From Sphaerodactylus townsendi (taxonomy: Eukaryota), in NCBI RefSeq assembly GCF_021028975.2, contig NC_059425.1:16182001-16246000 (forward strand): a stretch of DNA of 64,000 nt. The letters run 5' to 3'. The notes below the pieces were generated by a model. The model saw only the letters and a program-made list of their open reading frames with translations. It ran no database searches and was not told the origin of the DNA. The translations under genes and the position numbers were made by a program. How positions within the stretch are numbered: position 1 is the stretch's first letter; each line of letters opens with the position of its first letter. This document shows, piece after piece, positions 4,345 through 64,000 of this stretch.

Positions 4345-4558
4345 CATCTATGGCTACCAATCTTGATCCTCCTTGATCTCAGATTGCAAATGCCTTAGCA
4401 GACCAGGTGCTCGGGAGCAGCAGCAGAAGGCCACTGCTTTCACCTCCTGCAAGTGAGCTCCCAAAGGCACCTGGTGGGCCACTGCGAGTAGCAGAGTGCT
4501 GGACTAGATGGACTCTGGTCTGATCCAGCAGGCTCGTTCTTATGTTCTTATGTTCTTA
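4345..4558 (+). mobile_element. CR1 LINE 3' fragment
   Basis: tatggctaccaatcttga (YGYQS*) plus a 3' UTR closely matching the larger CR1 copies, and (TTCTTATG)n tail. Confidence 0.9.
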
Positions 4559-4952: not shown

Positions 4953-5587
4953 ACCTTGAAAGGAAGATCTTGATTTTCCCAGAAGCAACCAACACAGCTC
5001 ATGTTGTTTTGAGGGCTACGAGTCAGCAGTCTTTGACCAGCTTCACTGTGTGCCTCAAATCCTACACAGACCTGAGCCGTGCCTACAGCCTTTTCTCTTA
5101 CGCCACCAGAAAGTCTGACAACGAGTTCCTTATCTTCAAACCCAAACCCAACCAATACAACTTGTATGTGGGGGGATCCATCGTGACCTACAGTGTAGCA
5201 GACAATCGAGTCCCCAAACCACAGTGGGAGCATATTTGCATGAGTTGGGAGTCTGCCACAGGAATAGTGCAGTTTTGGTTGAATGGGGAAAGCTTGCCCC
5301 GCAAGGGTATGAAGAAAGGTTATACTATTGGTTCTGAAGCTTCAATCATACTCGGGCAGGAGCAGGATTCCTTTGGAGGTGGCTTTGACATCAACCAATC
5401 CTTTGTAGGCGAGATTGCAGACCTGTATTTGTGGGGTCGAGTGCTTTCACCGGAAGAACTGGTCCTCGTTGGCAACGGTGGTCACCTTTCTGACTACTTG
5501 ATCGATTGGCGATCCCTTAATTACGAAATCAAAGGCTATGTGGTGGTTAAGCCCTCCCTGTTTCACTCCTACAGAACCCCCATGTAA
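4953..5587 (+). CDS. PTX-A exon 2, short pentraxin (CRP/SAP/mucosal-pentraxin-like) domain; spliced product 232 aa
   Basis: Acceptor cttttacag|AC, signature HICMSWES, FTVC cysteine, DNE motif and LGQEQDSFGGGFDINQSFVG Ca2+ loop. Open to TAA. Confidence 0.96.
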
Positions 5588-5801
5588 CTCTGCAAAACAC
5601 AGAGAACAAGGTGGGGGGAGGGGAGGATCATAATTACCATAACTAATGTTTCTGCATGGTAATGAGACGGCATTTCTAAGGCTATTTTCCTGGGAGTTAA
5701 GTCCCGCAGAATACCACAGGACTTACTTCTGAGTTGACCCGCTGTGGCTTGCTCTTTTAGTCCTCGATCTGTTTGTTCAAACACATAAACCTGTCTTCTT
5801 C

Positions 5802-18009: not shown

Positions 18010-18150
18010 CAGGAGTGTCCAACTCTTGTGCTTCAGATGTTCATGGACTACAATTCCCATCAGCCCCTGCTGGCATGGACAATTGGCCATGCAGCAGGGG
18101 CTGATGGGAATTGTAGTCCATGAACATCTGAAGCACAAGAGTTGGACACC
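18010..18150. mobile_element. Palindromic ~140-bp MITE (cagatgttcatggactacaattcccatcagccc family)
   Basis: Near-perfect hairpin. Relatives at 33216-33291, 34677-34817, 57189-57301 and 61787-61927. Confidence 0.85.
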
Positions 18151-19213: not shown

Positions 19214-19365
19214 NNNNNNNNNNNNNNNNNNNNNNNNNNNNNNNNNNNNNNNNNNNNNNNNNNNNNNNNNNNNNNNNNNNNNNNNNNNNNNNNNNNNNNN
19301 NNNNNNNNNNNNNNNNNNNNNNNNNNNNNNNNNNNNNNNNNNNNNNNNNNNNNNNNNNNNNNNNN
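19214..19365. other. Assembly gap (N run)
   Basis: Run of N. Confidence 1.
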
Positions 19366-22397: not shown

Positions 22398-22461
22398 ATG
22401 AGGAAGATGCTTCTTTCTCTCTTGCTCCTTGCTGGTCTCTGGGGCTCTCTTGCCCAGAAAG
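22398..22461 (+). pseudogene. PTX-B exon 1, signal peptide MRKMLLSLLLLAGLWGSLAQK
   Basis: 64-bp phase-1 exon with donor G|gtgggt, homologous to exon 1 of PTX-C to F. Confidence 0.88.
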
Positions 22462-23181: not shown

Positions 23182-24013
23182 NNNNNNNNNNNNNNNNNNN
23201 NNNNNNNNNNNNNNNNNNNNNNNNNNNNNNNNNNNNNNNNNNNNNNNNNNNNNNNNNNNNNNNNNNNNNNNNNNNNNNNNNNNNNNNNNNNNNNNNNNNN
23301 NNNNNNNNNNNNNNNNNNNNNNNNNNNNNNNNNNNNNNNNNNNNNNNNNNNNNNNNNNNNNNNNNNNNNNNNNNNNNNNNNNNNNNNNNNNNNNNNNNNN
23401 NNNNNNNNNNNNNNNNNNNNNNNNCACCTGGAGAAAGGTATGATAAGGCGAATATGGGGAACTACATCCCCCAGGGTACGCCAGGGCACAGGGGAGGCCC
23501 GGATAAGAGAAGTTTTATTTTCCACTTGCCTGTTTTTGGAGCCAATGTGGGGTGATGGTGAAGAGCGGTGCAGTTTAATTTGGAAAACTGGGTTTGATTC
23601 CCTGCTCCTCCACATGAGTGGCAGACTCTTATCTGATGAACCGTTTTCCCCCACTCCTCCACATGAAGCTTGCTGGGTGAGCTTGGGTCAGATCCAGTTC
23701 TCCCAGCCCCACCTGCCTCACAAGGCGTCTGTTGTGGGGAGAGGAAGAGAAGGAGTTTGTCAGCCACCTTGAGTCTCCTTACAGGACAGAAAGGCAGGTA
23801 TGAATCCCAACTCTTCTTCTTCAAGGACCTGTCCCCCAGAAGTGGAAGCTGATAAACCTGTGAGGCAAAGTTAAGCGCTGGAAACGGGATGGTGGGAACT
23901 AATTGCCAAGGAATGAAGGAGCCAACCTCTCTGGCATGGCCCCCATCCAATTTCAGCAAAAGAAGATTTTTGAGGCAGCCATTTTGGCAAAGGGTGAAGA
24001 GATGAAACATGGG

Positions 24014-25158: not shown

Positions 25159-25787
25159 ATCTCGAAAGGAAGGCGTTCGTTTTTCCAGAGGCATCAAAAA
25201 CGGCGCATGTGGTCTTGAAGCCCACAATGCGACGTCCGTTGACCAGTTTCACTCTGTGCATGAGGTTCCACTCGGCCCTGACCTGCGGCTACAGCCTCTT
25301 CTCTTATGCCACAAAGAGAAACCCCAACGCGATCCTCCTCTTTGTGAAGAAACCCAATCGATTCGATTTTTATTTGGGCGGTAAAGCGGTGCCTTCACGG
25401 TTGCACCAAACTATGTCAACAGCCATGCTGGGAGGCACATCTGCTTGAGTTGGGAATCTTCCACTGGCTTAGTGGAGTTCTGGATCAACGGTCAACCTCT
25501 GGTCCGGAAGAGCCTGAAGAAAGGCCATGCTGTCCCCACCGAGGCATCCGTTATCCTCGGCCAAGAGCAAGATTCCTTCAGAGGTGGCTTCGACATCAAA
25601 GAATCCTTCGTTGGGGAGATCACGGACATGTGGGATCGTGTTCTGTCTCCCGATGAAGTGGGCCAGGCCTGGTATGTTGACGATTTCCCTGGAAATGTAA
25701 TTAACTGGAAATCGTTAAAACTACAAAACCCAAGGTAATGTTATTGTGAAGCCCGCTCTGGCTTCGTTCTACAGAGCTCCTGGGTAG
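25159..25787 (+). pseudogene. PTX-B exon 2, pentraxin domain with frameshifts
   Basis: Acceptor ctcctcag|AT and DLERKAFVFPEAS start. A -1 nt shift near 25391-25393 gives a stop at 25446-25448. Also a 6-nt deletion near 25627 and a +1 A at 25717-25720. Corrected reading gives HICLSWES and ends YRAPG* at 25787. AATAAA at 25935-25940. Confidence 0.85.
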
Positions 25788-27336: not shown

Positions 27337-27733
27337 TAAGAACATAAGAACAACATAAGAACAAGCCTGCTGGATCTGACCAGAGTCCATCTAGTCCAGC
27401 ACTCTGGTGCCTTTGGGAGCTCACAGGCAGGAGGTGAAAGCAATGGCCTGCTGCTGCTACTGCTGCTCCCGAGCACCTGGTCTGCTAAGGCATTTGCAAT
27501 CTGAGATCAAGGAGGATCAAGATTGGTAGCCATAGATCGACTTCTCCATAAATCTGTCCAAGCCCTTTTTAAAGCTATCCAGGCTAGTGGCCATCACCAC
27601 CTCCTGTGGCAGCATATTCCAAACACCAATCACGCGTTGCATAAAGAAGTGTTTCCTTTTATTAGTCCTAATTCTTCCCCCCAGCATTTTCAATGAATGC
27701 CCCCTGGTTCAATGAATGCCCCCTGGTTCTAGT
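27337..27733 (-). mobile_element. CR1 LINE 3' fragment
   Basis: (taagaaca)n tail and reverse complement of the CR1 3' end. Confidence 0.9.
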
Positions 27734-33618: not shown

Positions 33619-33682
33619 ATGCGGAAGATGCTCCTCTCTCTCCTCCTCCTCGTCAGCCTGGTGGGCTCTCTCGCTCTGGAAG
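33619..33682 (+). CDS. PTX-C exon 1, signal peptide MRKMLLSLLLLVSLVGSLALE
   Basis: 64-bp phase-1 exon, donor G|gtgggt. Confidence 0.92.
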
Positions 33683-33944: not shown

Positions 33945-34207
33945 ATAACCACATTAGCTTTAAAAGGGGCTTGGATAGATTTATGGAGGAGAAGTCAATT
34001 TATGGCTACCAATCTTGATCCTCTTTGATCTGAGATTGCAAATGCCTTAACAGACCAGGTACTCGGGAGCAACAGCTGCAGAAGGCCATTGCTTTCACCT
34101 CCTGCATGTGAGCTCCCAAAGGCATCTGGTGGGCCACTGCGAGTAGCAGAGAACTGGACTAGATGGACTCTGGTCTGATCCAGCTGGCTTGTTCTTATGT
34201 TCTTATG
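33945..34207 (+). mobile_element. CR1 3' fragment nested in a Penelope pseudo-LTR pair (33822-34447) in the PTX-C intron
   Basis: CR1 3' end with ttcttatg tail splits the gcatcta|tggctggcatctt pseudo-LTR. Confidence 0.85.
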
Positions 34208-34676
34208 GCTGGCATCTTGGGATGCATGTCAAGACAAGGTAAGATTATCTCTATGGTATGGTGTGGAGTGATTGTGTGGTGCGATACCTCTTTTGTGTAT
34301 CTCACTCTTCACCCATGTGTGAAAACAGAAACCCCATGACACAATCACGGGATGCACATCTTACCACGACACGCCTCTAAAGATGCCAAGACACCTTAGC
34401 CACAAAAACTACCAGATCAGGGCTACGTATCCTGGAAAACCCTCAGCTGCCCACACAGCTTCTGAAACTGAAAGCATTTTCCTTAAACAAAATTATGCAG
34501 TTTTGAGTTTCTGTCTGGAGATGTTTGTCTTGCTGGGAATGAGCCCTCTCCTCCCCCTCCCCATTTTCATGGTTGCATTTAATCCTTCTCGTCCACCCAA
34601 CAGCATGTGCTGTGTGCTATGAGGTGACTGGTTTGGTTGACTCTGCGACTGGGGGCCAGGCTAGGTTAGGCTAGTG

Positions 34677-34817
34677 CAGGGGTCTGCAACCTGCGGCTCT
34701 CCAGATGTTCATGAAGTACAATTCCCATCAGCCCCTGCCAGCATGGCCGATGCTGGCAGGGGCTGATGGGAATTGTAGTTCATGAACATCTGGAGAGCCG
34801 CAGGTTGCAGATCCTTG
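34677..34817. mobile_element. Palindromic hAT MITE in the PTX-C intron (same insertion as 61787-61927 in PTX-F)
   Basis: Perfect TSD GGCTAGTG. Same site and same variant TIR (atccttg) in PTX-F; absent in D and E. Confidence 0.9.
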
Positions 34818-35035
34818 GGCTAGTGGCAGAAGAATGTGGCCAGTTAGGCAACAGGTGGGTTGGAAGAGAATCCCTCTCTTGTTGGGGGGAAGGGAAATCA
34901 TTAATTCATTTGCCCTCTGAATTAATATATATTCTCAATCAGCAAGCAAATGTTTTTCACAAAAGACCCTCTGGGACATGACCTCTCTTGCAGAATGACA
35001 GTTTTGCCCAACCCTGATTCTCTTTCCCTCCGCAG

Positions 35036-35661
35036 ATCTGGAAGGGAAGGCATTGGTTTTCCCGGAAGCATCAGACACAGCCCATGCACGCTTGAACGTC
35101 ACGATCCAGCAGCCCCTGTCGAGCTTCACCCTGTGCCTAAGATACCTCACAGAAATAAAGCGCACCCAAACCCTTTTCTCTTACGCAAGCAAGAGGACTG
35201 ACAACGAGATAGCTCTCGACAGATACGATCTGGGTTACCAGCTTTATACACAGGGGCTTACCTATGCAGACTTCAAGGTTCCGGAAATATTAACCAGCAA
35301 CTCTCTTGGGGAGCACGTTTGCGTAAGTTGGGAGTCTGCCACAGGCTTAGCTGAGCTCTGGGTGAACTGGAGGCCCTTGGTCCGGAAGAGCTTGCAGAAA
35401 GGCCACTCCGTCATGGCTGAAGGATCCATTGTTCTTGGACAAGACCAGGATAATGTTGGAGGGGGCTTTAACATCAACGATTGCTTTGTAGGGGAGATCA
35501 CAGACGTGTACATGTGGGACCGTGTTCTGTGCCCCGACGAGGTGGTCCATGCCTTTCACAACCACCCTCTTCCAGGCTACCTGATCAACTGGAGATCACT
35601 GAGTTACAGCATTAAAGGCTATACCAAGCCTGCCTTGTTGTCTGCCTGCAGAACTGGGTAG
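35036..35661 (+). CDS. PTX-C exon 2, short pentraxin domain; spliced product 229 aa
   Basis: Acceptor ctccgcag|AT, HVCVSWES, DNE, GQDQDNVGGGFNINDCFVG. Open to TAG. Confidence 0.94.
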
Positions 35662-39807: not shown

Positions 39808-41960
39808 AGAACATAAGAACATATGAAAGAGCCTGCTGGATCAGACCAGAGTCCATCTAGTCCAGGACTCTGCTACTCGCAGTGGCCCACCAGGTGCCTT
39901 TGGGAGCTCACATGCAGGATGTGAAAGCAATGGCCTGCTGCTGCTGCTGCTGCTGCTCCCGAGCACCTGGTCTGCTAAGGCATTTGCAATCTCAGATCAA
40001 GGAGGATCAAGATTGGTAGCCATAGATCGACTTCTCCTCCAGAAATCTGTCCAAGCCCCTTTTAAAGCTATCCAGGTTAGTGGCCATCACCATCTCCTGT
40101 GGCAGCATGTTCCAAACACCAATCACACGTTGTGTGAAGAAATGTTTCCTTTTATTAGTCCTAATTCTTCCCCCCACCATTTTCAATAAATGCCCCCTGG
40201 TACTAGTATTGTGAGAAAGAGATAAAAATTTCTCTCTGTCAACATTTTCTACCCCATGCATAATTTTATAGACTTCAATCATATCCCCCCTCAGCCGTCT
40301 CATCTCCAAACTAAAGAGTCCCAAACGCTGCAGCCTCTCCTCATAAGGAAGGTGCTCCAATCCTTCAATAATCCTCGTTGCCCTTCTCTGCACTTTTTCT
40401 ATCTCTTCGATATCTTTTTTGAGATGTGGCGACCAGAACTGAACACAGTATTCCAAGTGCAGTCGCTCCACGGCTTTATATAAGGGCATGACAATCCTTG
40501 CAGTTTTATTATCAACTCCTTTCCTAATGATCCCCAGCATAGAGTTTGCCTTTTTCACAGCTGCCATGCATTGAGTTGACATTCCCATGGAATTCCCATG
40601 GACACTTGTAGCGTGTATGTGAAGTTTGGATTTTTTGCCCCTATGTGCATCACTTTTCATTTTGCTACATAGAATAGAATAGAATAGAATAGAATAGAAT
40701 AGAATAGAATAGAATAGAATAGAATCTTTATTGGCCAAGTGTGATTGGACACACAAGGAATTTGTCTCCGGTGCATATGCTCTCAGTGTACATAAAAGAA
40801 AAATACATTTGTCAAGAATCATAAGGTACAGCACTTAATGATTGTCATATAGGTCTAGTAAGCAATCAGGAAACAATCAGTAGTAATGAAAACATAAAAT
40901 GTAAAATCATAAAATAAAATAAAATAAAATAAAATAAAATAAAATAAAATGTCAGCACAGGCTATAGTCATACAGTCATAAGTGGGAGGAGATGGGTAAT
41001 AGGAATGATGAAAAAAGTAGTGCAGTAATTATATAATAAGTATATAATAAATAGTTTAACATTATCGAGGGAATTATTTGTTTAACAGAGTGATGGCATT
41101 CGGGAAAAACTGTTCTTATGTCTAGTTGTCTTGGTGTGCAGTGCTCTGTAGCAACGTTTAGAGGGTAAGAGTTGAAACAGTTTATGTCCAGGATGCGAGG
41201 GGTCAGTAAATATTTTCACAGCCCTTTTTTTGACCCGTGCAGTATACAGGTCCTCAATGGAAGGCAGGTTAGCAGCAATTGTTTTTTCTGCAGTTCTGAT
41301 TATTCTCTGAAGTCTGTGTCGATCTTGTTGGGTTGCAGAACCAAACCACACAGTTATAGAGGTGCAGATGACAGACTCAATGATTCCTCTGTAGAACTGT
41401 ATCAGCAGCTCCTTGGGCAGTTTGAGCTTCCTGAGTTGGCGCAGAAAGAACATTCTTTGTTGTGCTTTTTTGATGACATTTTTGATATTAGGTGACCATT
41501 TTAGGTCATGAGATATGATGGAGCCTAGAAATTTAAAGGTCTCTACTATTGATACTGTGTTGTCTAGTATTGTGAGAGGAGGTAGGATGGGAGGGTTTCT
41601 CCTGAAATCTACCACCATTTCTACGGTTTTAAGTGTGTTCAGTTCTAGATTGTTCCAGTGGCACCACGAGGCTAGTTGTTCAACCTCCCGTCTGTATGCG
41701 GTTTCATCGTTGTCTCGAATGAGACCAATCACTGTTGTATCATCTGCAAATTTCAGTATTTTAACAGTATTTATTACAGACATTGAACTGCATTTGCCAT
41801 TTCTTAGCCCACTCACCTAATTTATCAAGGTCCGTTTGGAGCACTTCACAATCCTTTGCAGTTCTCACCACCCTACATAATTTGGTATCATCTGCAAATT
41901 TGGCCACCACGCTACCCACCCCTACTTCCAGGTCATTTATGAATAGGTTAACGAGCCCTG
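39808..41960 (-). mobile_element. CR1 LINE 3' portion interrupted by a Rex1/Babar insertion
   Basis: NLFINDL..KFADDTKL (41761-41979 ORF) continues as HLEYCVQFWSP..RRLRGDMIEVYK..YGYQS (40007-40670), then the 3' UTR. Confidence 0.93.
40671..41779 (-). mobile_element. Rex1/Babar-clade LINE 3' fragment
   Basis: KFADDTTVIGLI..NDETAYRREV..LELNTLKTVEMVVDFRR..KKAQQRMFFLRQL, (TTCTA)n tail at 40671-40725, apparent TSD ACAT (40667-40670, 41780-41783). Confidence 0.88.
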
Positions 41961-44752: not shown

Positions 44753-45384
44753 CTACCCAGCTCTTTGGGCAGACAGCAGGGCAGGCTTAACAAGGGCATA
44801 GCCTCTGATGCTGTAACTCAGTGATCTCCAGTTGATCAGGTAGTCAGGAAGAGGGTAGTTGTGAAAGGCAAGGACCACCTCGTCGGGGCACAGAACACGG
44901 TCCCACATATACAAGTCTGTGATCTCCCCTACAAAGCAATAGTCGATGTCAAAGCCCCCTCCAAAGTTATCCTGGTCTTGTCCAAGAACAATGGATCCTT
45001 CAGCCATGACGGAGTGACCTTTCTGCAAGCTCTTCCGGACCAAGGGCCTCCCGTTCACCCAGAGCTCAGCTAAGCCTGTGGCAGACTCCCAACTTACGCA
45101 AACGTGCTCCCCAACCGAGTTGCTGGTTAACATGTCGGGAACCTTGAACTCTACATAGTTACCCCCCAGCATATAAAGATGGTAGGCAATATTGTTTCTG
45201 TTGAGAACAATCTCGTTGTCATTCCTTTTGCTTGCGTAAGAGAAAAAGGTTTGGCGGTGCTTTATTTCTGTGAGGTATCTTAGGCACAGGGTGAAGCTCG
45301 ACAGGGGCTGCTGGATCGTGACGTTCAAGCGTGCATGGGCTGTGTCTGATGCCTCCGGGAAAACCAATGCCTTCCCTTCCAGAT
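44753..45384 (-). CDS. PTX-D exon 2, short pentraxin domain; spliced product 231 aa
   Basis: Acceptor ctccgcag|AT on the minus strand, HVCVSWES, DNE, GQDQDNFGGGFDIDYCFVG. Intact ORF. Confidence 0.95.
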
Positions 45385-46325: not shown

Positions 46326-46389
46326 CTTCCAGAGCGAGAGAGCCCACGAGGCTGAGGAGGAGGAGGAGAGAGAGGAGCATCTTCCGCAT
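46326..46389 (-). CDS. PTX-D exon 1, signal peptide MRKMLLSLLLLLSLVGSLALE
   Basis: 64-bp phase-1 exon, donor G|gtgggt. Confidence 0.93.
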
Positions 46390-49929: not shown

Positions 49930-50561
49930 CTACCCAGCTCTGTGGGCTGACAGTAGGGCAGGCTTAACAAGGGCATAGCCTCTAATGCTGTAACTCAGTG
50001 ATCTCCAGTTAATCAGGTAGCCAGGAAGAAGGTAGTTGTGAAAGGCAAGGACCACCTCGTCGGGGCACAGAACACGGCCCCACATGTACACGTCTGTGAC
50101 CTTCCCTACAAAGGATTGGTTGATGTCAAAGCCCCCTCCAACGTTATCCTGGTCTTGCCCGATAACCACGGATCCTTCAGCACTGACGGAGTGACCTTTC
50201 TGCAAGCTCTTCCGGACCAAGGGCCTCCCGTTCACCCAGAGCTCAGCTAAACCTGTGGCAGACTCCCAACTTACGCAAACGTGCTCCCCAATCGAGTTGC
50301 TGGTTAGTATGTCTGGAACCTTGAACTCTACATGGGTAAGCCCCTCTATATTAAGCTGGTAACCATTATTGCTTTTGTAGAGGGCGATCTCATTGTCAGT
50401 CCTCTTGCTTGCGTAAGAGAAAAGGGTTTGGAAGCCCTTTATTTCTGTGAGGTATCTTAAGCACAGGGTGAAGCTCGTCAGGGGCTGCTGGGTCGTGATA
50501 TTCAAGCGTGCATGAGCTGTGTTTGATGCCTCCGGGAAGACCAACGCCTTCCTTTCCAGAT
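49930..50561 (-). CDS. PTX-E exon 2, short pentraxin domain; spliced product 233 aa
   Basis: Acceptor ctcctcag|AT, HVCVSWES, DNE, GQDQDNVGGGFDINQSFVG. Intact ORF. Confidence 0.95.
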
Positions 50562-50998: not shown

Positions 50999-52550
50999 CT
51001 TCCCTGAAGACTAAAAGATGGCCAATGTCACACCAATCTTTAAGAAAGGATCTAGGGGGGACCCAGGAAATTACAGGCCAGTCAGTTTGACATCTGTTCC
51101 TGGTAAATTAGTAGAATCTATCATTAAAGATAAAATTATTAAACATGTAGAAAAGCAAGACCTGCTGAGGAAGAGTCAGCATGGCTTTTGCAGAGGCAAG
51201 TCCTGTCTTACAAACTTACTAGAGTTCTTTGAGGGTGTAAACAGGCATGTGGATAAGGGGGAACCAGTGGACATTGTCTACTTGGATTTCCAAAAGGCTT
51301 TTGACAAAGTTCCTCACCAGAGACTATTGAGAAAACTCAGCAATGAAGGAATAAGAGGGGAAGTCCTCCTATGGATTAAAAACTGGTTGAGAAACAGGAA
51401 GCAAAGAGTGGGTGTAAATGGGAAATTTTCACAATGGAGAGATTTAGGGAGTGGTGTCCCCCAAGAATCCGTTTTGGGACCAGTGCTCTTTAACCTTTTC
51501 ATAAATGACCTGGAAGTAGGGGTGGGTAGCATGGTGGCCAAGTTTGCAGATGATACCAAATTATGTAGGGTGATGAGAACCGCAAAGGATTGCGAAGAGC
51601 TCCAAGCGGACATTGATAAATTAGGTGAGTGGGCTAAGAAATGGCAAATGCAGTTCAATGTAGCAAAATGTAAAGTGATGCACATAGGGGCAAAAAATCC
51701 AAATTTCACATACAAGCCACAGGGGTCAGTGCTATCAGTCACAGACCAGGAAAGGGATTTAGGCGTCTTAGTTGATAGTTCCATGGGAATGTCAACTCAA
51801 TGCATGGCAGCTGTGAAAAAGGCAAACTCTATGCTGGGGATAATTAGGAAAGGATAATAAAACTGCAAAGATTGTCATGCCCTTATATAAAGCAGTGGTG
51901 CGACCGCACTTGGAGTACTGTGTCCAGTTCTGGTCGCCACATCTCAAAAAGGATATGGAAGAGATGGAAAAAGTGCCGAGAAGGGCAACGAGAATGATTG
52001 AGGGATTGGAGCACCTTCCTTATGAAGAGAGACTGCAGCGTTTAGGGTTCTTTAGTTTGGAGAGGAGACGTCTGAGGGGGGATATGACTGAAGTTATAAA
52101 ATTGTGCATGGGGTAGATAATGTTGACAGAGAGAAATTTTTTTCTCTTTCTCACAATACTAGAACCAGGGGACATACATTGAAAATGCTGGGGGGAAGAA
52201 TAAGGACTAATAAAAGGAAACACTTCTTCATGCAATGTGTGATTGGTGTTTGGAATATGCCGCCACAGGAGGTGGTGATGGCCACTAACCTGGATAGCTT
52301 TAAAAAGGGCTTGGACAGATTTATGGAGAAGTCGATCTATGGCTACCAATCTTGATCCTCCTTGATCTCAGATTGCAAATGCCTTAGCAGACCAGGTGCT
52401 CAGGAGCAACAGCCGCAGAAGGCCATTGCTTTCACATTCTGCATGTGAGGTCCCAAAGGCACCTGGTGGGCCACTGCGAGTAGCAGAGAGCTGGACTAGA
52501 TGGACTCTGGTCTGATCCAGCTGGCTTGTTCTTATGTTCTTATGTTCTTA
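50999..52550 (+). mobile_element. CR1 LINE (RT domain to 3' end)
   Basis: ANVTPIFKKG..NYRPVSLTS, YLDFQKAFDKVPH, FADDTKL. Small frameshifting deletions, (TTCTTATG)n tail, apparent TSD ttaactgt. Confidence 0.95.
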
Positions 52551-53901: not shown

Positions 53902-54816
53902 GTAAACTATGTAGGGTGGTGAATACCACAAAGGATTGCGAAGAGCTCCAAGCGGACCTTGATAAATTAGGTGAGTGGGCTCAGAAATGGCAAATGCAGT
54001 TCAATGTAGCAAAATGTAAAGTGATGCACATAGGGGCAAAAAATCCAAACTTCACATACACGCTACAGGGGTCAGTGCTATCAGTCACAGACCAGGATAA
54101 ACTCTATGCTGGGGATAATTAGGAAAGGAATTGATAATAAAACTGCAAAGATTGTCATGCCCTTATATACAGCAGTGGTGCGACCGCACTTGGAGTACTG
54201 TGTTCAGTTCTGGTCGCCACATCTCAAAAAGGATATCGAAGAGATAGAAAAAGTGCAGAGAAGTGCAACGAGGATGATTGAAGGATTGGAGCACCTTCCT
54301 TATGAGGAGAGACTGCAGCGTTTGGGACTCTTTAGTTTGGAGAGGAGACGGCTGAGCGGGGATATGACTGAAGTCTATAAAATTATGCATGGGGTAGAAA
54401 ATGTTGACAGAGAGAATTTTCTCTCTCTTTCTCACAATACTAGAACCAGGGGGCATTCATTGAAAATGCTGGGGGGGAGAATTAGGACTAATAAAAGGAA
54501 ACACTTCTTCACGCAACGTGTGATTGGTGTTTGGAATATGCTGCCACAGGAGGTGTTGATGGCCACTAACCTGGATAGCTTTAAAAGGGGCTTGGACAGA
54601 TTTATGGAGGAGAAGTCGATCTATGGCTACCAATCTTGATCCTCCTTGATCTCAGATTGCAAATGCCTTAGCAGACCAGGTGCTCGCAGAAGGCCATTGC
54701 TTTCACCTCCTGCCTGTGAGCTCCCAAAGGCACCTGGTGGGCCACTGTGAGTAGCAGAGTGCTGGACTAGATGGATTCTGGTCTGATCCAGCAGGCTAAT
54801 TCTTATGTTCTTATGT
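53902..54816 (+). mobile_element. CR1 LINE 3' portion with an internal deletion
   Basis: ELQADLDKL..RPHLEYCVQFWSP..YGYQS*, 3' UTR and tail. Confidence 0.93.
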
Positions 54817-55283: not shown

Positions 55284-55353
55284 CTTCCAGAGCGAGAGAG
55301 CCCACGAGGCTGAGGAGGAGGAGGAGGAGGAGAGAGAGGAGCATCTTCCGCAT
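55284..55353 (-). CDS. PTX-E exon 1, signal peptide MRKMLLSLLLLLLLSLVGSLALE (two extra Leu)
   Basis: 70-bp phase-1 exon, (CTC)n expansion, donor G|gtgggt. Confidence 0.92.
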
Positions 55354-56366: not shown

Positions 56367-59300
56367 CTCCCTTTCAATCAGAGAGCAGCAGTGGCGTACT
56401 GGTTAAGAGCAGGTGTGCCCCCTGGTTTGATTCCCCACTGTGCCGCTTGAGTTGAGGAGGCTTAATTGGTGAACTAGATTAGCTTGTGCACTCCAACACA
56501 CACCAGCTGGGTGACCTTGGGCTAGTCACAGTTCGTGTTCTGTTGTCATGCTGAGCTGTCAGGAGGGTCTGAGCCTACCTTGCAAGGATGGCGGAGAGGG
56601 GTGGTGCTCATAGTCTCTCATTTGAAAACAATCCCAGTTATATTGGCAATAATGCTTCCAAAAAGGAAAATACAAGAAACCCTAATTGCTGTTTAGTCAG
56701 CTTAACCATAACTTGGCCACGACACTCCTCCAAATAGTCCTTGGCTGTAATGCTAAACTCACTGCTCCTCTGGTGAAAATCCACATCAAAGTTGAGTCCT
56801 CAATGACATCCTTTAAAAGGAATCTCTCCTGGGTTGCTGAAAAATAACCTTGAAGCTTTATATAATCGTAATGTGGTTGTTATGTAGCCAGAAGTAGGCG
56901 TGGCTTAGTCAACAATAGGTACTTAAGGGGCTAGTAATGTTAGGTTCTGGACCAGGCCTCTATAAGCGGTTTTGGAATTGGAAGTCTTCATTGGGTTGGC
57001 CACAGGCACTCAGCTTCAGAAAGCCAGATCGCAAGATCCTGGCTTGTACAGTAACCTTTATCCCTTACCAATTCCTCCAACTCCCCCCTCCCTCCAGTAC
57101 AGGGAATGTGGGAACAACGAGGTGTGAAAGACTTTGTTTTGGAAAGCAAGTGTCCTGATGAGCTGACCCCACCCTCAGCCTTCTAGAGCAGGGGTCTGCA
57201 ACTTGCAGCTCTCCAGATGTTCATGGATTACAATTCCCATCAGCCGCTGCCAGCATGGCCAAGCCATGAACATCTGGAGAGCTGCGGGTTGCAGACCCCT
57301 GCTCTAGACCTCCCTCCTCCCATCTGGAGTCCAATAGGGGTGCTTTACTTATCTACATTTCTAAGTCCATTGATACAGAACAAAAGATCCATTAATATAA
57401 GATAGGTGATTACATAGAAGGTCAGCATTCGCACTCTTGCCAGCCAAACCGATTTCCCCCTAGCCCAGATGTGCCTCTTGGCGCCTCTTGGTCTGAGCTC
57501 AGGAGGAGGCAGGTGCCACTCCTGACAAACAGTAGGATCAGCTTAGGACAATATGGAAGCTAGGAAATGGAACGGAAGCAGTTCTGTCGGAGGTCAGTAC
57601 ACGTGTCTTCTCCTTAGAACTGCTGTTCTTCTTATTATAGTCCTTAACTTGGTTGACATTGTTGTAAAGTGTAAACAGCAAGCCATATGCTCCTTGAAAG
57701 TATTTACTGAGTTAAGAGATAGGTCAAAATTCTTGGCAGAGTTACAGCTACTTTTGGCTACAGTTGTCTCAGCACACGTACAGTGCAATATTGTTTTTCT
57801 CCGTGGTTACCCTGCCCTTTTAGCTAACACACCTTTATACTGAGCAACACACTAGTATCTGGGTCTTTATTGGTATCATAAAATCATAGAGTTGGAAGAG
57901 ACCACAAGGGCCATCAAGTCCAACCCCCTGCAATGCAGGAACATATAATCAGTATCTGTTAAACTCTGTTAATAATGTATGTCCACCAACAGGGGGGATA
58001 GCTTCAGCTGAAGGTTGGATTGGAAACCAGCATTCAATTAAAGCTCTGCCATCCCCACTGCCATTTCCCAAGGCAAGTATGATGTAGTGGTTAAGAGCAG
58101 TGGACTGTAATCTGGAGAACCGAGTTTGACTCTCCACTCCTCCACATGAGCGGTAGATTCTTCTCTGGTGAATTGGATTTGTTTCCCTGCCCATGAAGCC
58201 TGCTGGGTGACTTTCTGGTATTGTGACCTTGGGCTAGTCCCAGTTCTCTCAGAACTCTCTCAGCCCCACCTACCTCACAAGGTGTCTGTTGGGGGAGAGG
58301 AAGGGAAAGGAGTTTGCAAGCCACTTTGATCCTCCAGCAATCTGATTGGCTGCTAGGTGTTGCCCAAGCTCTAATTGGATGTATCCATTGCTCCCTGTCT
58401 CTTTCACTTCCATTGGTCGGCGCCCTTTGCTTTTCCCAGCTGTGCAATAGTTCCGGCCTCAGATGAGAGAAGACTTCTGATTGGTGGTGAGTTTCTACAG
58501 TAGACCTGACTGGTCCAACCAATACCTTGCCCTCCTTTTTCTCCAGTACAGTGCAGCACTAACAATACAAAGAATTCCCCATCCCCTATTCTTCTTTAAA
58601 ATAATATATATATTTTAAAATATTATGTTAATAAATATGAGCATCTTTCCTGTCCCCACACAAGTGCCCCATTGTAGCTACCCTTGTGTGCAATGGATAC
58701 ATTCAATTAGAGCTTGGGGAACACTTAGCAGCCAATCAGATTGCTGGAAAAATGTCAGGGCTGCGAAGATTCCTGCCTGTGTGTTGTCGAATCTACACAT
58801 GTGTGAGATTTTTTAAAAAGAAACATTGATTCCCAACTCCTCCACCTGAGTGGCAGAGGCTTATCTGGTGAACCAGATGTGTTTCCTCACTCCTGCATTC
58901 CTGCAGCGTGACCTTGGGCTAGCCACAGTTCTCTCAGAACATTCTCAGCCCCACCTACCTCACAAGGTGTCTGTTGTGGGGAGAGGAAAGGAAAGGAGTT
59001 TGTAAGCCACCTTGAGTCTTCTCTCAAGAGAGAAAAGTAGGGTATAAATCCAAACTGTTCTCTTCTTCTTCTACAGTGGGACTATGACATCTTGTGATTT
59101 GGTTGTTCTACCTCTGTTTATAAAACTGGCCTCCTGTGGCTTCACCTGGGGTTTCATTAGAAGACTGCTCTACCTGTGTGAGATGTGCTGAGCATTGGTT
59201 GGCTGCTATGGTCCATATGCAGCCACAGCACCCCGCTCTGTGATTGGTGGGCATTGGCGTAATGAGAGATTCCACTCCCGCATCCAATCAGAGAATCCAG

Positions 59301-60444: not shown

Positions 60445-60574
60445 NNNNNNNNNNNNNNNNNNNNNNNNNNNNNNNNNNNNNNNNNNNNNNNNNNNNNNNN
60501 NNNNNNNNNNNNNNNNNNNNNNNNNNNNNNNNNNNNNNNNNNNNNNNNNNNNNNNNNNNNNNNNNNNNNNNNNN
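60445..60574. other. Assembly gap in the PTX-F 3' UTR
   Basis: Run of N. Confidence 1.
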
Positions 60575-60936: not shown

Positions 60937-61568
60937 CTACCCAGCTCTTTGGGCAGACAGCAAGACAGGCTTAACAAGGGCATAGCCTCTGATGCTGTAA
61001 CTCAATGATCTCCAGTTAATCAGGTAGCCAGGAAGAGGGTAGTTGTGAAAGGCAAGGACCACCTCGTCGGGGCACAGAATACGGTCCCACATATACAAGT
61101 CTGTGATCTCCCCTACAAAGGATTGGTTGATATCAAAGCCCCCTCCAAAGGTATCCTGTTCTTGCCCGATAACAATGGATCCTTCAGCACTGACGGAGTG
61201 ACCTTTCTGCAAGCTCTTCCGGACCAAGGGCTTCTCGTTCACCCAGAGCTCAACTAAACCTGTGGCAGACTCCCAACTTACGCAAACGTGCTCCCCAACA
61301 GAGTTACTGGTTAATATTTCCGGAACCGTGAAGTCTACTTTGGTAAGCCCCTCTATATAAAGCTCGTAGCCAATATTGTTTCTGTTGAGAAGAATCTCGT
61401 TGTCAGTCCTCTTGCTTGCGTAAGAGAAAAGGGGTTGGATGTGCTTTATTTCTGTGAGGTATCTTAGGCACAGGGTGAAGCTCGTCAGGGGCTGCTGGAT
61501 CGTGGTCTTCAAGCGTGCATGGGCTGTGTCTGATGCCTCCGGGAAAACCAATGCCTTCCCTTCCAGAT
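60937..61568 (-). CDS. PTX-F exon 2, short pentraxin domain; spliced product 231 aa
   Basis: Acceptor ctcctcag|AT, HVCVSWES, DNE, GQEQDTFGGGFDINQSFVG. Intact ORF. Confidence 0.95.
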
Positions 61569-62672
61569 CTGAGGAGGGAAAGAGAATCAGGGTTGGGCAA
61601 AACTGTCATTCTGCAAGAGAGGTTATGTCCCAGAGGGTCTTTTGTGCAAAACATTTGCTTGCTGATTGAGAATATATATTAATTCAGAGGGCAAATGAAT
61701 AAATGATTCCCCTTCCCCCCAACAAGAGAGAGATTCTCTTCCAACCCACCTGTTGCCTAACTGGCCACATTCTTCAGCCACTAGCCCAAGGATCTGCAAC
61801 CTGTGGCTCTCCAGATGTTCATGAACTACAATTCCCATCAGCCCCTGCCAGCATCGGCCATGCTGGCATGGGCTGATGGGAATTGTAGTTCATGAACATC
61901 TGGAGAGCCGCAGGTTGCAGACCCCTGCTTAGCCTAACCTAGCCTGGCCCCCAGTCAGAGTCAACCAAACCAGTCACCTCATAGCACACAGCTCAAGCTG
62001 TTGGGTGGAGGAGGAGAATTAAATGCAACCATGAAAATCGGGGGGGGGGGGGGGCTCATTCCCAGGAAGAGGGAATCTCCAAACAGAATCTCCCAACTGC
62101 ATAATCTTGTTCAAGGAAAATGCTTTGTGTTCAGAAGCTGTGCTGACTGCTGAGGGTTTTCCAGGACGCGTAGCCCTGGTCTGGTTGTTTTTGTGGCTAA
62201 GGTTTTGCTGCATCTATGACCGGCATCTTTAGAGGCATGTCATGGTAAGATGTACTCCTCTCCATCCCGTGGTGTGGAGTGGAGTGATTGTGCCATGGGG
62301 TGTTTGTTTTCACACATGGACCGAAGAGTGAGGTAAACAAAAGAGATATCCCATCACACAATCGCTCCACACTGTGCCACAGAGATGATCTTATCTTTTT
62401 TGTGACATGCCTCCAAAGATGCCTGCCATAGATGCAAGTATAATGTTTGGAGCAAAACCTACCAGACTAGAAATCTCTCAACACTGTCAACAGCTAATTG
62501 ATTCTGGCTGTGAAAGCCTTTGACAATACATAACTGTATTAGTCTGCTGTAGATCTCTCATATGCTTTTCCCTTAAAATATTATTGGCATCTAATGTGCT
62601 ACTGGAGTCACATCTAGATGCTTCGGCTGAAGCATGTGGAGGCTCTTGTCCCACTGTGATGATGATACCCAC

Positions 62673-62736
62673 CTTCCAGGGCGAGAGAGCCCACGAGGCT
62701 GATGAGGAGGAGGAGAGAGAGGAGCATCTTCTGCAT
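62673..62736 (-). CDS. PTX-F exon 1, signal peptide MQKMLLSLLLLISLVGSLALE
   Basis: 64-bp phase-1 exon, donor G|gtgggt. Confidence 0.93.
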
Positions 62737-63478: not shown

Positions 63479-64000
63479 CATAAGAACATAAGAACAAGCC
63501 AGCTGGATCAGACCACAGTCCATCTAGTCCAGCTCTCTGCTACTCGCAGTGGCCCACCAGGTGCCTTTGGGAGCTCACATGCAGGATGTGAAAGCAATGG
63601 CCTTCTGCTGCTGCTGCTGCTCCTGAGCACCTGGTCTGCTAAGGCATTTGCAATCTCAGATCAAAGAGGATCAAGATTGGTAGCCATAGATCGACTTCTC
63701 CTCCATAAATCTGTCCAAGGCCCTTTTAAAGCTGTCCAGGTTAGTGGCCATCACCACCTCCACCTGTGGCAGCATATTCCAAACACCAATCACACGTTGC
63801 GTGAAGAAGTGTTTCCTTTTATTAGTCCTAATTCTTCTCCCCAGCATTTTCAATGGATGCCCCCTGGTTCTAGTATTGTGAGAAAGAGAGAAAAATGTCT
63901 CTCTGTCAACATTTTCTACCCCATGCATAATTTTGTAGACTTCAATCATATCCCCCCTCAGACGTCTCCTCTCCAAAGAGTCCCAAACGCTGCAGCCTCT
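63479..64000 (-). mobile_element. CR1 LINE 3' portion running off the window end
   Basis: ERRRLRGDMIEVYK..YGYQS*, 3' UTR and taagaaca tail. Confidence 0.93.

What the first reader, a model, noticed from the sequence alone, without database searches (positions are those of the whole stretch)
35150..35310. Hypervariable ligand-binding face among otherwise near-identical paralogs C-F
Seen: the segment after DNE differs sharply. C is IALDRYDLGYQLYTQGLTYADF, D is IVLNRNNIAYHLYMLGGNYVEF, E is IALYKSNNGYQLNIEGLTHVEF and F is ILLNRNNIGYELYIEGLTKVDF. A second patch reads EIK-RTQTL / HRQTF / GFQTL / HIQPL. The HVCVSWESATGL..LVRKSLQKGHSV framework is almost invariant even at synonymous sites. Established: this segment carries the phosphocholine pocket of human CRP (F66, T76, E81; Y64, Y74, K79 in SAP). 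By manual alignment, position 66 is D/N/Y/N, 76 is Y/Y/N/Y and 81 is about Y/Y/H/K. Inference: diversifying selection for different non-phosphocholine ligands. Homologous segments lie at ~45110-45270, 50290-50445 and 61295-61455.
Basis: partly seen in the sequence, partly recalled or inferred. Interest (0 to 1): 0.85.

Follow-up and report, generated by a model that had tools for sequence, protein, structure and literature searches.

The report
Variable binding pocket in gecko pentraxins
Four neighbouring copies of a blood-borne pattern-recognition gene (a CRP/SAP-type pentraxin) in a dwarf gecko differ mostly in the short stretch that forms the ligand pocket, while gene conversion keeps the rest of the protein alike; this fits copies tuned to different targets, but positive selection is not proven.

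Summary
The window is Sphaerodactylus townsendi chromosome DNA carrying a tandem array of short pentraxins.

**Observation: confirmed.**
- Copies C-F are intact two-exon genes, 82-85% identical overall.
- In the 23 residues after the DNE calcium motif they are only 43-57% identical.
- Nucleotide divergence peaks at 0.21 there, against about 0.05 in the flanks.

**Location on the ligand site: supported.** Of 12 human CRP residues that contact phosphocholine in crystals, 9 vary among C-F, against 49 of 197 other positions (p=6e-4).

**Diversifying selection: suggestive only.**
- Site-model tests are non-significant (p=0.14-0.05).
- A 42-codon binding-face set has omega 2.4 (nominal p=0.04). The other 167 codons have omega 0.46.

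**The "invariant framework" is gene conversion.**
- Segment trees conflict strongly.
- In pairs C-D and E-F, synonymous divergence is several-fold higher in the island than in its flanks. The island therefore kept old divergence that the flanks lost.

Neither the CRP nor the SAP pocket residue set is retained. This is a new member of a known kind, of moderate interest.

The parts
33619..33682 (+). Copy C exon 1: start codon, signal peptide, phase-1 GT donor
35036..35661 (+). Copy C exon 2: complete mature pentraxin domain, open to the stop codon
   Evidence: Pfam PF00354 200 bits.
35161..35307 (+). Copy C divergence island (codons 42-90 of exon 2).
35209..35277 (+). Copy C hypervariable core (codons 58-80). 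Three beta-strands carry the equivalents of CRP L64, F66, S74, T76 and E81.
35306..35412 (+). Homogenised framework (HxCxSWxS signature onward). No differences among the four copies over 35306-35345.
35443..35484 (+). Copy C second calcium/ligand loop (residues 155-168). Variable at the E138, E147, Q150 and S151 equivalents.
44753..45384 (-). Copy D exon 2, intact
45113..45259 (-). Copy D divergence island (core 45143-45211)
46326..46389 (-). Copy D canonical signal-peptide exon 1, not used in the public gene model
49930..50561 (-). Copy E exon 2, intact
50290..50436 (-). Copy E divergence island (core 50320-50388)
55284..55353 (-). Copy E candidate signal-peptide exon 1, about 4.7 kb upstream of exon 2
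60937..61568 (-). Copy F exon 2, intact
61297..61443 (-). Copy F divergence island (core 61327-61395)
62673..62736 (-). Copy F exon 1 (signal peptide)

Best explanation
C-F are four functional, secreted short pentraxins produced by a tandem expansion in the Sphaerodactylus lineage.

**Shown.**
- Repeated gene conversion between the copies keeps the scaffold alike: the N-terminal strands, the HxCxSWxS core and much of the intron and flanks.
- A roughly 145-nt island has not been homogenised.
- The island encodes the loop before the DNE strand and the three beta-strands after DNE.
- By homology to CRP and SAP, these elements, together with the second calcium loop, form the calcium-dependent ligand pocket on the recognition (B) face.

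**Inferred.**
- The pocket-lining residues have been replaced differently in each copy, while the core metal ligands (the D60, N61, Q139 and D140 equivalents) are kept.
- The four protomers should therefore still bind through calcium but prefer different, non-phosphocholine ligands.
- Selection for different pockets most likely both speeds amino-acid change there and removes conversion tracts that would erase the differences.
For: **The genes are maintained.**
- All four have intact exon 1, a GT donor, an AG acceptor and an open exon 2.
- The CDS has 114 substitutions and only 1 indel, which is in frame. Noncoding flanks have 25 indels for 276 substitutions.
- Omega for the 167 codons outside the binding face is 0.46, below 1 at p=0.003.

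**Gene conversion is shown.**
- The best tree is CD|EF for codons 1-37 and for codons 93-165 (by 18 lnL units in the latter). It is CE|DF for codons 166-209.
- CF|DE-type sites occur in the intron.

**The island is older than its flanks.** Synonymous divergence for C-D is 0.19 inside against 0.03 outside. For E-F it is 0.26 against 0.07. Both give p of about 0.015.

**There is excess amino-acid change even at equal age.** For C-E, pS is 0.20 inside against 0.17 outside, but pN is 0.16 against 0.05.

**Omega estimates.**
- The core has omega 2.18.
- The binding-face set has omega 2.42, nominal p=0.041.
- Heterogeneity against the rest gives 2dlnL=25.3, p=3e-6.

**Link to the ligand site.** 9 of 12 a priori CRP ligand-contact positions vary, p=6e-4.

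**Not simply the family's most variable region.**
- The island ranks 45th of 185 windows by entropy across 86 other pentraxins.
- C-F pairs put 29-39% of their differences there, against a median of 14% for between-species pairs.

**Fold is kept.** In the three strands, positions in the register opposite to the pocket residues (in the AlphaFold2 model's strand assignment) are mostly conserved (4 of 10 vary). Positions in the pocket register nearly all vary (9 of 10), p=0.057.
Against: - No test shows omega significantly above 1 without a post hoc choice of sites. The core against omega=1 gives p of about 0.15, M1a/M2a p=0.14 and M7/M8 p=0.15.
- Counting gives pN/pS of about 1. That is what complete loss of constraint on a surface patch would give.
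- Only four sequences were available, with no outgroup DNA.
- Expression could not be checked.
- Three-dimensional clustering rests on sequence homology to CRP/SAP and the model's strand pattern. It was not measured on coordinates.
- Several replacements hit positions that are nearly invariant in the family and could mean decay instead of new function. Examples are R61 to H or G and E172K in copy E. The calcium ligands also change, to N164 and D167 in C and Y167 in D.
- High mismatch density alone can stop conversion tracts at the island without any selection.
Confidence: 0.55

Rival explanations
1. Relaxed constraint without adaptive change. After duplication the copies became redundant. The exposed pocket surface drifts neutrally (omega about 1) while the fold is kept. 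Conversion tracts miss or stop at the island by chance, or because its mismatch density blocks heteroduplex formation.
For: - Island pN/pS is 0.6-1.4 by counting.
- The ML omega of the core does not differ significantly from 1.
- Site-model LRTs are non-significant.
- Changes occur at positions nearly invariant in the family, and at calcium ligands in C and D.
Against: - The point estimates of omega are 2.2-2.4.
- The variation falls specifically on crystallographic ligand-contact positions. It does not fall on the family's most variable region, residues 179-208.
- All six pairs keep the island diverged despite several independent conversion events around it.
- The same concentration of differences recurs in close paralogs of other squamates.
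Confidence: 0.28
2. The island sequences are old lineages, or were imported from pentraxin donors outside the window. On this reading the divergence was not generated in these four genes and says little about recent selection on them.
For: - Synonymous divergence is raised in the island.
- Copy D's island is as similar to the Euleptes orthologue (57%) as to any S. townsendi paralog.
- Sub-blocks are shared between copies: D-F 92% over 37 nt, and C-E and E-F 86-87% over 45-50 nt.
Against: - No other donor exists in the window or in 8.7 kb beyond its end.
- Copies A and B are unlike the island.
- Most island differences are private to one copy.
- Whole-protein trees make C-F monophyletic with 100/99 support, although conversion can create that signal.
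Confidence: 0.12
3. Assembly artefact: collapsed or duplicated haplotypes, or sequencing errors, mimic paralogs with a variable patch.
For: The assembly has N gaps nearby (19214-19365, 23182-23424, 60445-60574).
Against: - The copies differ by 10-17% in noncoding DNA.
- They have different repeat insertions, orientations and intron lengths.
- The differences are substitutions that keep the reading frame.
- The public record matches the window at 100%.
Confidence: 0.02

Closest known systems
Human C-reactive protein (CRP; PDB 1B09)
   Same: - Same family and fold. HMMER E=1e-53 to the 1B09 chain sequence (8e-55 to the full-length CRP chain 8wv4), full-length alignment.
- The DNE calcium motif, the QxD of the second calcium loop, the HxCxSWxS signature and the disulfide cysteines are present.
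- The two-exon gene has the signal peptide on exon 1.
   Different: - The phosphocholine pocket is not kept. F66 is D/N/Y/N and E81 is Y/Y/H/K (copies C/D/E/F); the T76-equivalent position is Y/Y/N/Y, the Tyr of SAP Y74 in C, D and F.
- E147 is N in C. Q150 is D in C and Y in D.
- There are four tandem paralogs, where humans have one gene.
Human serum amyloid P component (SAP; PDB 1SAC/1GYK)
   Same: - E=2e-51, with an alignment through the island that needs only single-residue gaps.
- The D at the E147 position in copies D, E and F is SAP-like.
- Y74 is retained in C, D and F.
   Different: The SAP pocket triad L62/Y64/Y74 (PMC4118831) is complete in none of the copies. L62 is A/V/A/L and Y64 is D/N/Y/N (copies C/D/E/F).
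Zebrafish CRP1-7 and salmonid CRP-like multigene sets
   Same: They are lineage-specific multigene sets of short pentraxins, with isoform-dependent ligand binding and antiviral activity reported (PMC6969114, PMC6503050).
   Different: - The fish genes belong to a different vertebrate lineage, so any expansion there would be separate from the gecko one; this was not tested here.
- I found no report of a conversion-homogenised scaffold around a protected pocket island in the library searched.
- No reptile pentraxin protein has been characterised (PMC6503050).
Limulus CRP genes
   Same: Three homologous genes encode subunits with identical N-terminal (44 residues) and C-terminal stretches and a variable middle. 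The subunits co-assemble into one oligomer (PMC6503050).
   Different: - These are arthropod genes forming a double hexamer, with glycosylation and three disulfides.
- The relation of the variable middle to the pocket was not examined here.
Close pentraxin paralogs in other squamates (Gekko japonicus P0007/P0013, Euleptes P0008-10, Ahaetulla, Pogona)
   Same: Within-species paralogs also concentrate their differences in the same 23-residue window. The share is 50% in the G. japonicus pair and 27-29% in the others, against a median of 14% for between-species pairs.
   Different: - Only proteins were compared, so there are no DNA, dN/dS or conversion analyses for them.
- The pairs are not independent, so the p-value (0.0009) is indicative only.
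Conversion-homogenised gene clusters with protected variable regions (MHC peptide-binding region, clustered protocadherins)
   Same: The population-genetic pattern is the same. Conversion homogenises the framework, while recognition residues stay diverged with raised dN and raised linked dS (own knowledge; PMC1852091 and PMC12674619 appeared).
   Different: - The protein families are unrelated.
- Here the variants are four fixed paralogs, not alleles or dozens of variable exons.

Membership tests
Short pentraxins (Pfam PF00354; CRP/SAP family) | Full-length match to the Pentaxin profile above the curated cut-off | tested here: met
   C, D, E and F score 200, 212, 215 and 218 bits against a cut-off of 25. 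Profile positions 1-189/194 are covered.
Short pentraxins (Pfam PF00354; CRP/SAP family) | Pentraxin signature H-x-C-x-S/T-W-x-S and the conserved disulfide pair (CRP C36/C97) | tested here: met
   HVCVSWES is present in all four copies. C52 and C114 (P0001 numbering) are invariant, as in all 91 aligned relatives.
Short pentraxins (Pfam PF00354; CRP/SAP family) | Two-exon gene: signal peptide on exon 1, a phase-1 intron, and the whole mature domain on exon 2 | tested here: met
   All four have an ATG plus hydrophobic leader, a G|GT donor, and a polypyrimidine tract with AG acceptor. I built no joined model. The full-length proteins used were database entries P0001-P0004.
Short pentraxins (Pfam PF00354; CRP/SAP family) | Double calcium site (CRP D60, N61, E138, Q139, D140, E147, Q150) | tested here: inconclusive
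   The D60, N61, Q139 and D140 equivalents are invariant. Position 138 is D/D/D/E, 147 is N/D/D/D and 150 is D/Y/Q/Q (copies C/D/E/F). E and F look complete, while C and D are altered.
Short pentraxins (Pfam PF00354; CRP/SAP family) | Cyclic pentamer with separate recognition and effector faces | not tested
   Only a monomer was modelled (pLDDT 89.5).
CRP in the strict sense (calcium-dependent phosphocholine binding) | Pocket residues F66, T76 and E81 | tested here: not met
   Position 66 is D/N/Y/N. Position 76 is Y/Y/N/Y by the SAP-anchored alignment, or T/M/I/I by the CRP alignment. Position 81 is Y/Y/H/K. Residue roles are from PMC6503050 and PMC9832874.
SAP-type recognition | Hydrophobic pocket L62, Y64 and Y74 | tested here: not met
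   The positions read A/V/A/L, D/N/Y/N and Y/Y/N/Y. No copy has all three. The pocket definition is from PMC4118831.
Recognition region under diversifying (positive) selection | dN/dS significantly above 1 at the variable sites | tested here: inconclusive
   - Core omega is 2.18, not significant.
- The binding-face set has omega 2.42, nominal p=0.041, with a set chosen partly post hoc.
- M1a/M2a gives p=0.14 and M8a/M8 p=0.054.
- NG86 pN/pS is 0.6-1.4.
Tandem gene family under concerted evolution | Conflicting phylogenies along the gene and tracts of near-identity between different pairs | tested here: met
   The best topology changes between segments, by up to 18 lnL units. Informative-site patterns switch from CF|DE to CD|EF to CE|DF. 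Near-identical tracts occur in C-D, E-F, C-F and C-E.

The most novel reading that the evidence does not exclude
The array may work as a germline 'constant scaffold plus variable pocket' system.
- Gene conversion would keep the protomer interfaces of the four genes interchangeable.
- Selection would protect a 145-nt cassette that encodes alternative calcium-site pockets.
- Co-expressed protomers could then mix into heteropentamers with combined specificities, as the three Limulus CRP subunits do.
- The same cassette appears to diversify repeatedly in independent squamate pentraxin expansions.

Nothing here tests co-expression or mixed assembly.
Probability: 0.12. Interest if true: 0.7.

Novelty: new member of a known kind. 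Interest (0 to 1): 0.45.

Why it matters
No reptile pentraxin protein has been isolated or characterised (PMC6503050). This array gives four natural variants of one scaffold that differ mainly at crystallographically defined ligand-contact positions. That makes it a compact test set for how pentraxin pockets set specificity. It is also a clear small example of gene conversion and local divergence acting together in an innate immune recognition gene. The pattern recurs in close paralogs of other squamates. If that holds up, diversification of this pocket after duplication may be a general rule for the family. It does not overturn current views. Lineage-specific expansion and diversification of soluble pattern-recognition proteins is expected.

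Tried and rejected
- **Expression and reads.** No expression or read-level check was made, and read laying was not used.
- **Structure search.** Model coordinates are not exposed to scripts. Mapping onto the B face therefore rests on sequence alignment to CRP/SAP, published contact lists and the model's strand pattern.
- **Outgroup DNA.** The closest orthologue (Euleptes, P0005) is not on record. No outgroup codon analysis or polarised substitution count was possible.
- **Software.** PAML, HyPhy and GARD are not installed. I wrote GY94 M0/M1a/M2a/M7/M8/M8a with per-segment trees and checked it on simulated data.
- **Site models.** These gave no significant positive selection.
- **Strand periodicity.** The test for pocket register against opposite register is borderline (p=0.057), and omega for those 10-codon sets is uninformative.
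- **Donors.** A search for the island elsewhere in the window and in 8.7 kb beyond it found only the four paralogs.
- **Further copies.** None lie beyond the window end.
- **'Generally most variable region' idea.** Rejected. The island ranks 45th of 185 windows by family-wide entropy.
- **Pseudogene reading of the whole genes.** Rejected, on the indel deficit and omega 0.46 outside the pocket.
- **Complex prediction.** Not used. A mixed-pentamer prediction between 82%-identical protomers would not discriminate.
- **Joined models.** I made no joined exon 1 plus exon 2 model.

Full report
**What the window is**

The translated exon at 35036-35661 matches, at 100%, a Sphaerodactylus townsendi protein (P0001). 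Its paralogs are P0002 (D), P0004 (E) and P0003 (F). P0003 is encoded on chromosome record CM037614.2 of assembly GCA_021028975.2, and that locus overlaps the window at 100%.

A tblastn of copy C against the window finds six pentraxin domains:
- A at 4955-5590 (+), 49% identical to C.
- B at about 25161-25717 (+), split over two frames.
- C at 35036-35661 (+).
- D at 44753-45384 (-).
- E at 49930-50561 (-).
- F at 60937-61568 (-).

No further copy lies in the 8.7 kb beyond the window end.

**The observation**

All four copies have the features of working genes:
- An open exon 2.
- A canonical signal-peptide exon with a G|GT donor.
- A polypyrimidine tract with AG acceptor.
- Full-length Pfam Pentaxin matches of 200-218 bits.

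The full-length proteins used for alignment and folding were database entries P0001-P0004.

C-F are 82-85% identical over the mature domain. By region:
- 43-57% in residues 77-99 (P0001 numbering).
- 86-100% in residues 20-56.
- 83-88% in residues 100-226.

At the DNA level, mean pairwise divergence peaks at 0.21 at 35209-35298 and drops to about 0.05 on each side. The intron and 3' flank show 0.10-0.17.

The C-D pair shows the sharpest edges: 1 difference in 180 nt, then 33 in 144 nt (35162-35305), then 2 in 148 nt. All six pairs have no difference over 35306-35345.

'Otherwise near-identical' is somewhat overstated. A second variable cluster sits in the calcium loop (residues 155-168).

**Where the island sits in the protein**

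HMMER aligns copy C to human CRP chains (E=8e-55 for the full-length chain 8wv4, 1e-53 for 1B09) and to human SAP (E=2e-51) over the whole domain. An AlphaFold2 model built from a 91-sequence alignment has mean pLDDT 89.5. It places residues 75-82, 85-90 and 94-99 in three consecutive strands.

The alignment to SAP, which needs only single-residue gaps in this stretch, gives these equivalences (copies C/D/E/F):

| Human position | C/D/E/F |
|---|---|
| SAP L62 / CRP L64 | A/V/A/L |
| SAP Y64 / CRP F66 | D/N/Y/N |
| SAP Y74 / CRP T76 | Y/Y/N/Y |
| SAP K79 / CRP E81 | Y/Y/H/K |

The HMMER alignment to CRP itself shifts position 76 by one residue.

Published structures define the sites:
- F66, T76 and E81 form the phosphocholine pocket of CRP (PMC6503050).
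- L62, Y64 and Y74 form the SAP pocket. D58, N59, E136, Q137, D138 and Q148 are its metal ligands (PMC4118831).
- Table EV1 of PMC9832874 lists 12 CRP residues that contact phosphocholine or a mimic: D60, N61, L64, F66, S68, S74, T76, E81, E138, D140, E147 and Q150.

Taking that list as an a priori set, 9 of 12 positions vary among C-F, against 49 of 197 others (one-sided Fisher p=6e-4). The three invariant ones are the core metal ligands D60, N61 and D140.

Across 87 other pentraxins, position 80 is F or Y in 73 sequences, and the Euleptes orthologue has F. Asp or Asn there in C, D and F is therefore a derived, radical change.

Here it reads R/H/G/H. From the hairpin register of the model, this patch should lie next to residues 82-84 on the same sheet. 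That is an inference, not a measurement.

**Is it selection?**

PAML and HyPhy were not available. I implemented GY94 codon models with a separate four-taxon tree for each of four segments. The code recovers known parameters from simulated data.

Whole-gene results:
- M0 omega is 0.78.
- M1a against M2a gives 2dlnL=3.88 (p=0.14).
- M7 against M8 gives p=0.15.
- M8a against M8 gives p=0.054.

Regional results:

| Site set | Omega | Test |
|---|---|---|
| Second patch, 9 codons | no synonymous change | 2dlnL=4.6 |
| Binding face, 42 codons (residues 61-65, 77-99, 155-168) | 2.42 | nominal p=0.041; set chosen partly after seeing the data |
| Remaining 167 codons | 0.46 | below 1 at p=0.003 |

The binding-face set and the rest differ at p=3e-6.

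Counting (Nei-Gojobori) gives island pN/pS of 0.6-1.4 across pairs.

Simulation under the nearly-neutral model with the fitted trees expects 13.5 amino-acid and 7.4 synonymous changes in the 23-codon core, against 25 and 4 observed (P of 0.003 or less). The window-scan-corrected P is 0.005. That rejects 'average constraint'. It does not reject 'no constraint'.

In short, the pocket evolves about five times faster at replacement sites than the scaffold, with point estimates above 1. Four sequences cannot separate positive selection from full relaxation.
- The dN/dS criterion is undecided.
- The B-face criterion is passed, by homology.
- The binding criterion is untestable here.

**Gene conversion**

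The best tree changes along the gene:
- CD|EF for codons 1-37.
- Nearly star-like for codons 38-92.
- CD|EF for codons 93-165, better by 18 lnL units.
- CE|DF for codons 166-209.

Informative sites in the intron favour CF|DE, and those in the 3' flank favour CE|DF.

Synonymous divergence for C-D is 0.19 in the island against 0.03 in the flanks. For E-F it is 0.26 against 0.07. Both give p of about 0.015. The island therefore kept old divergence that the flanks lost. It is not a burst after a conversion event.

For C-E, the flanks are as old as the island (pS 0.17 against 0.20). Replacement divergence is still three times higher in the island, 0.16 against 0.05. So both processes contribute: homogenisation of the scaffold and faster replacement in the pocket.

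Selection may keep conversion out of the island, or the island's mismatch density may block it. The data cannot say which.

**Are the genes alive?**

Noncoding parts of the duplicated unit carry 25 indels for 276 substitutions. The coding exon carries one indel for 114 substitutions, a 6-nt in-frame deletion in C. With omega 0.46 outside the pocket, this rules out four drifting pseudogenes.

**Wider context**

A protein tree puts C-F together (support 100/99) with a single Euleptes sequence as sister (100/99). Copy A groups with a conserved set that has one or two members in each gecko. Conversion could inflate the monophyly of C-F.

The island is not the most variable part of the family. It ranks 45th of 185 windows by entropy. 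The top region is residues 179-208.

The share of differences falling in the island window, which is 11% of the length, is:

| Comparison (pairs 75-95% identical) | Share in the window |
|---|---|
| Between-species pairs | median 14%, 90th percentile 21% |
| Within-species paralog pairs of other species | median 19% |
| Gekko japonicus pair P0007/P0013 | 50% |
| Six S. townsendi pairs | 29-39% |

Pocket-focused divergence after duplication may thus be recurrent in squamates.

Literature searches found no paper on pentraxin gene conversion or on reptile pentraxin expansions. One review states that no reptile CRP protein has been characterised (PMC6503050).

**Verdict**

- The placement on the ligand pocket is supported.
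- 'Diversifying selection for non-phosphocholine ligands' is the most likely reading (about 0.55) but is not demonstrated.
- Relaxed constraint is the main rival (about 0.28).
- This is a new member of a known kind: a lineage-specific expansion of a soluble pattern-recognition protein with a diversified binding site and a conversion-homogenised scaffold.

Noticed in passing
window 22398-22461 and 25161-25717: Copy B has a canonical signal-peptide exon. Its mature domain is split over two reading frames, with a second shift near the C-terminus. It lacks two residues in the ITDVYMWD motif and has PNA in place of the DNE calcium motif. It is probably a pseudogene. An N gap (23182-23424) lies in its intron.
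   Followed up: partly
window 46326-46389 and 55284-55353: The public gene models for D (P0002) and E (P0004) start with non-canonical N-termini that lack a signal peptide. Canonical signal-peptide exons with GT donors lie upstream. For E the exon is about 4.7 kb away, with repeat insertions in between, and its leader has two extra leucines.
   Followed up: partly
window 34671-34823; also 61781-61927, 18031-18133, 57183-57307: A roughly 150-nt nearly perfect palindrome (MITE-like element) sits in the intron of copy C. Related copies lie in the intron of F and elsewhere in the window.
   Followed up: no
window 33955-34207 and at least six other places (e.g. 4346-4552, 27349-27577, 39812-40070, 52295-52544, 54576-54815, 63479-63733): A roughly 250-nt interspersed repeat, 82-94% identical between copies, is scattered through the array. 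It includes the introns of C, E and F.
   Followed up: no
P0001 residues 168, 184 and 223 (window about 35482-35484, 35530-35532, 35647-35649): All four copies carry an extra cysteine at residue 184, where relatives mostly have Ser. C and D have another at residue 168, next to the calcium loop. C has a third near the C-terminus. Unpaired cysteines could give extra intrachain or interchain disulfides.
   Followed up: no
copy E, window 50044-50046 (P0001-equivalent residue 172): Copy E has Lys where all 87 aligned relatives have Glu (FVGE to FVGK). It also has D180G and the longest branch in the tree. From memory, the human equivalent (CRP D155) makes an inter-protomer salt bridge. If so, assembly of E may be altered. 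This is unverified.
   Followed up: no
window 35625-35630 region (copy C C-terminus): Copy C alone has a 6-nt in-frame deletion that removes two residues (GYALVKP becomes GYTKP). It is the only indel in the four coding exons.
   Followed up: partly
proteins P0007 and P0013 (Gekko japonicus); P0008-P0010 (Euleptes europaea): Other gecko paralog pairs show the same concentration of differences in the strands after DNE (13 of 26 differences in the G. japonicus pair). This suggests a recurrent pattern worth a family-wide codon analysis.
   Followed up: partly
window 4955-5590: Copy A is the most canonical pentraxin of the array (Pfam 258 bits). It groups with a conserved gecko SAP-like set, next to an Euleptes sequence, unlike the C-F clade.
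   Followed up: partly
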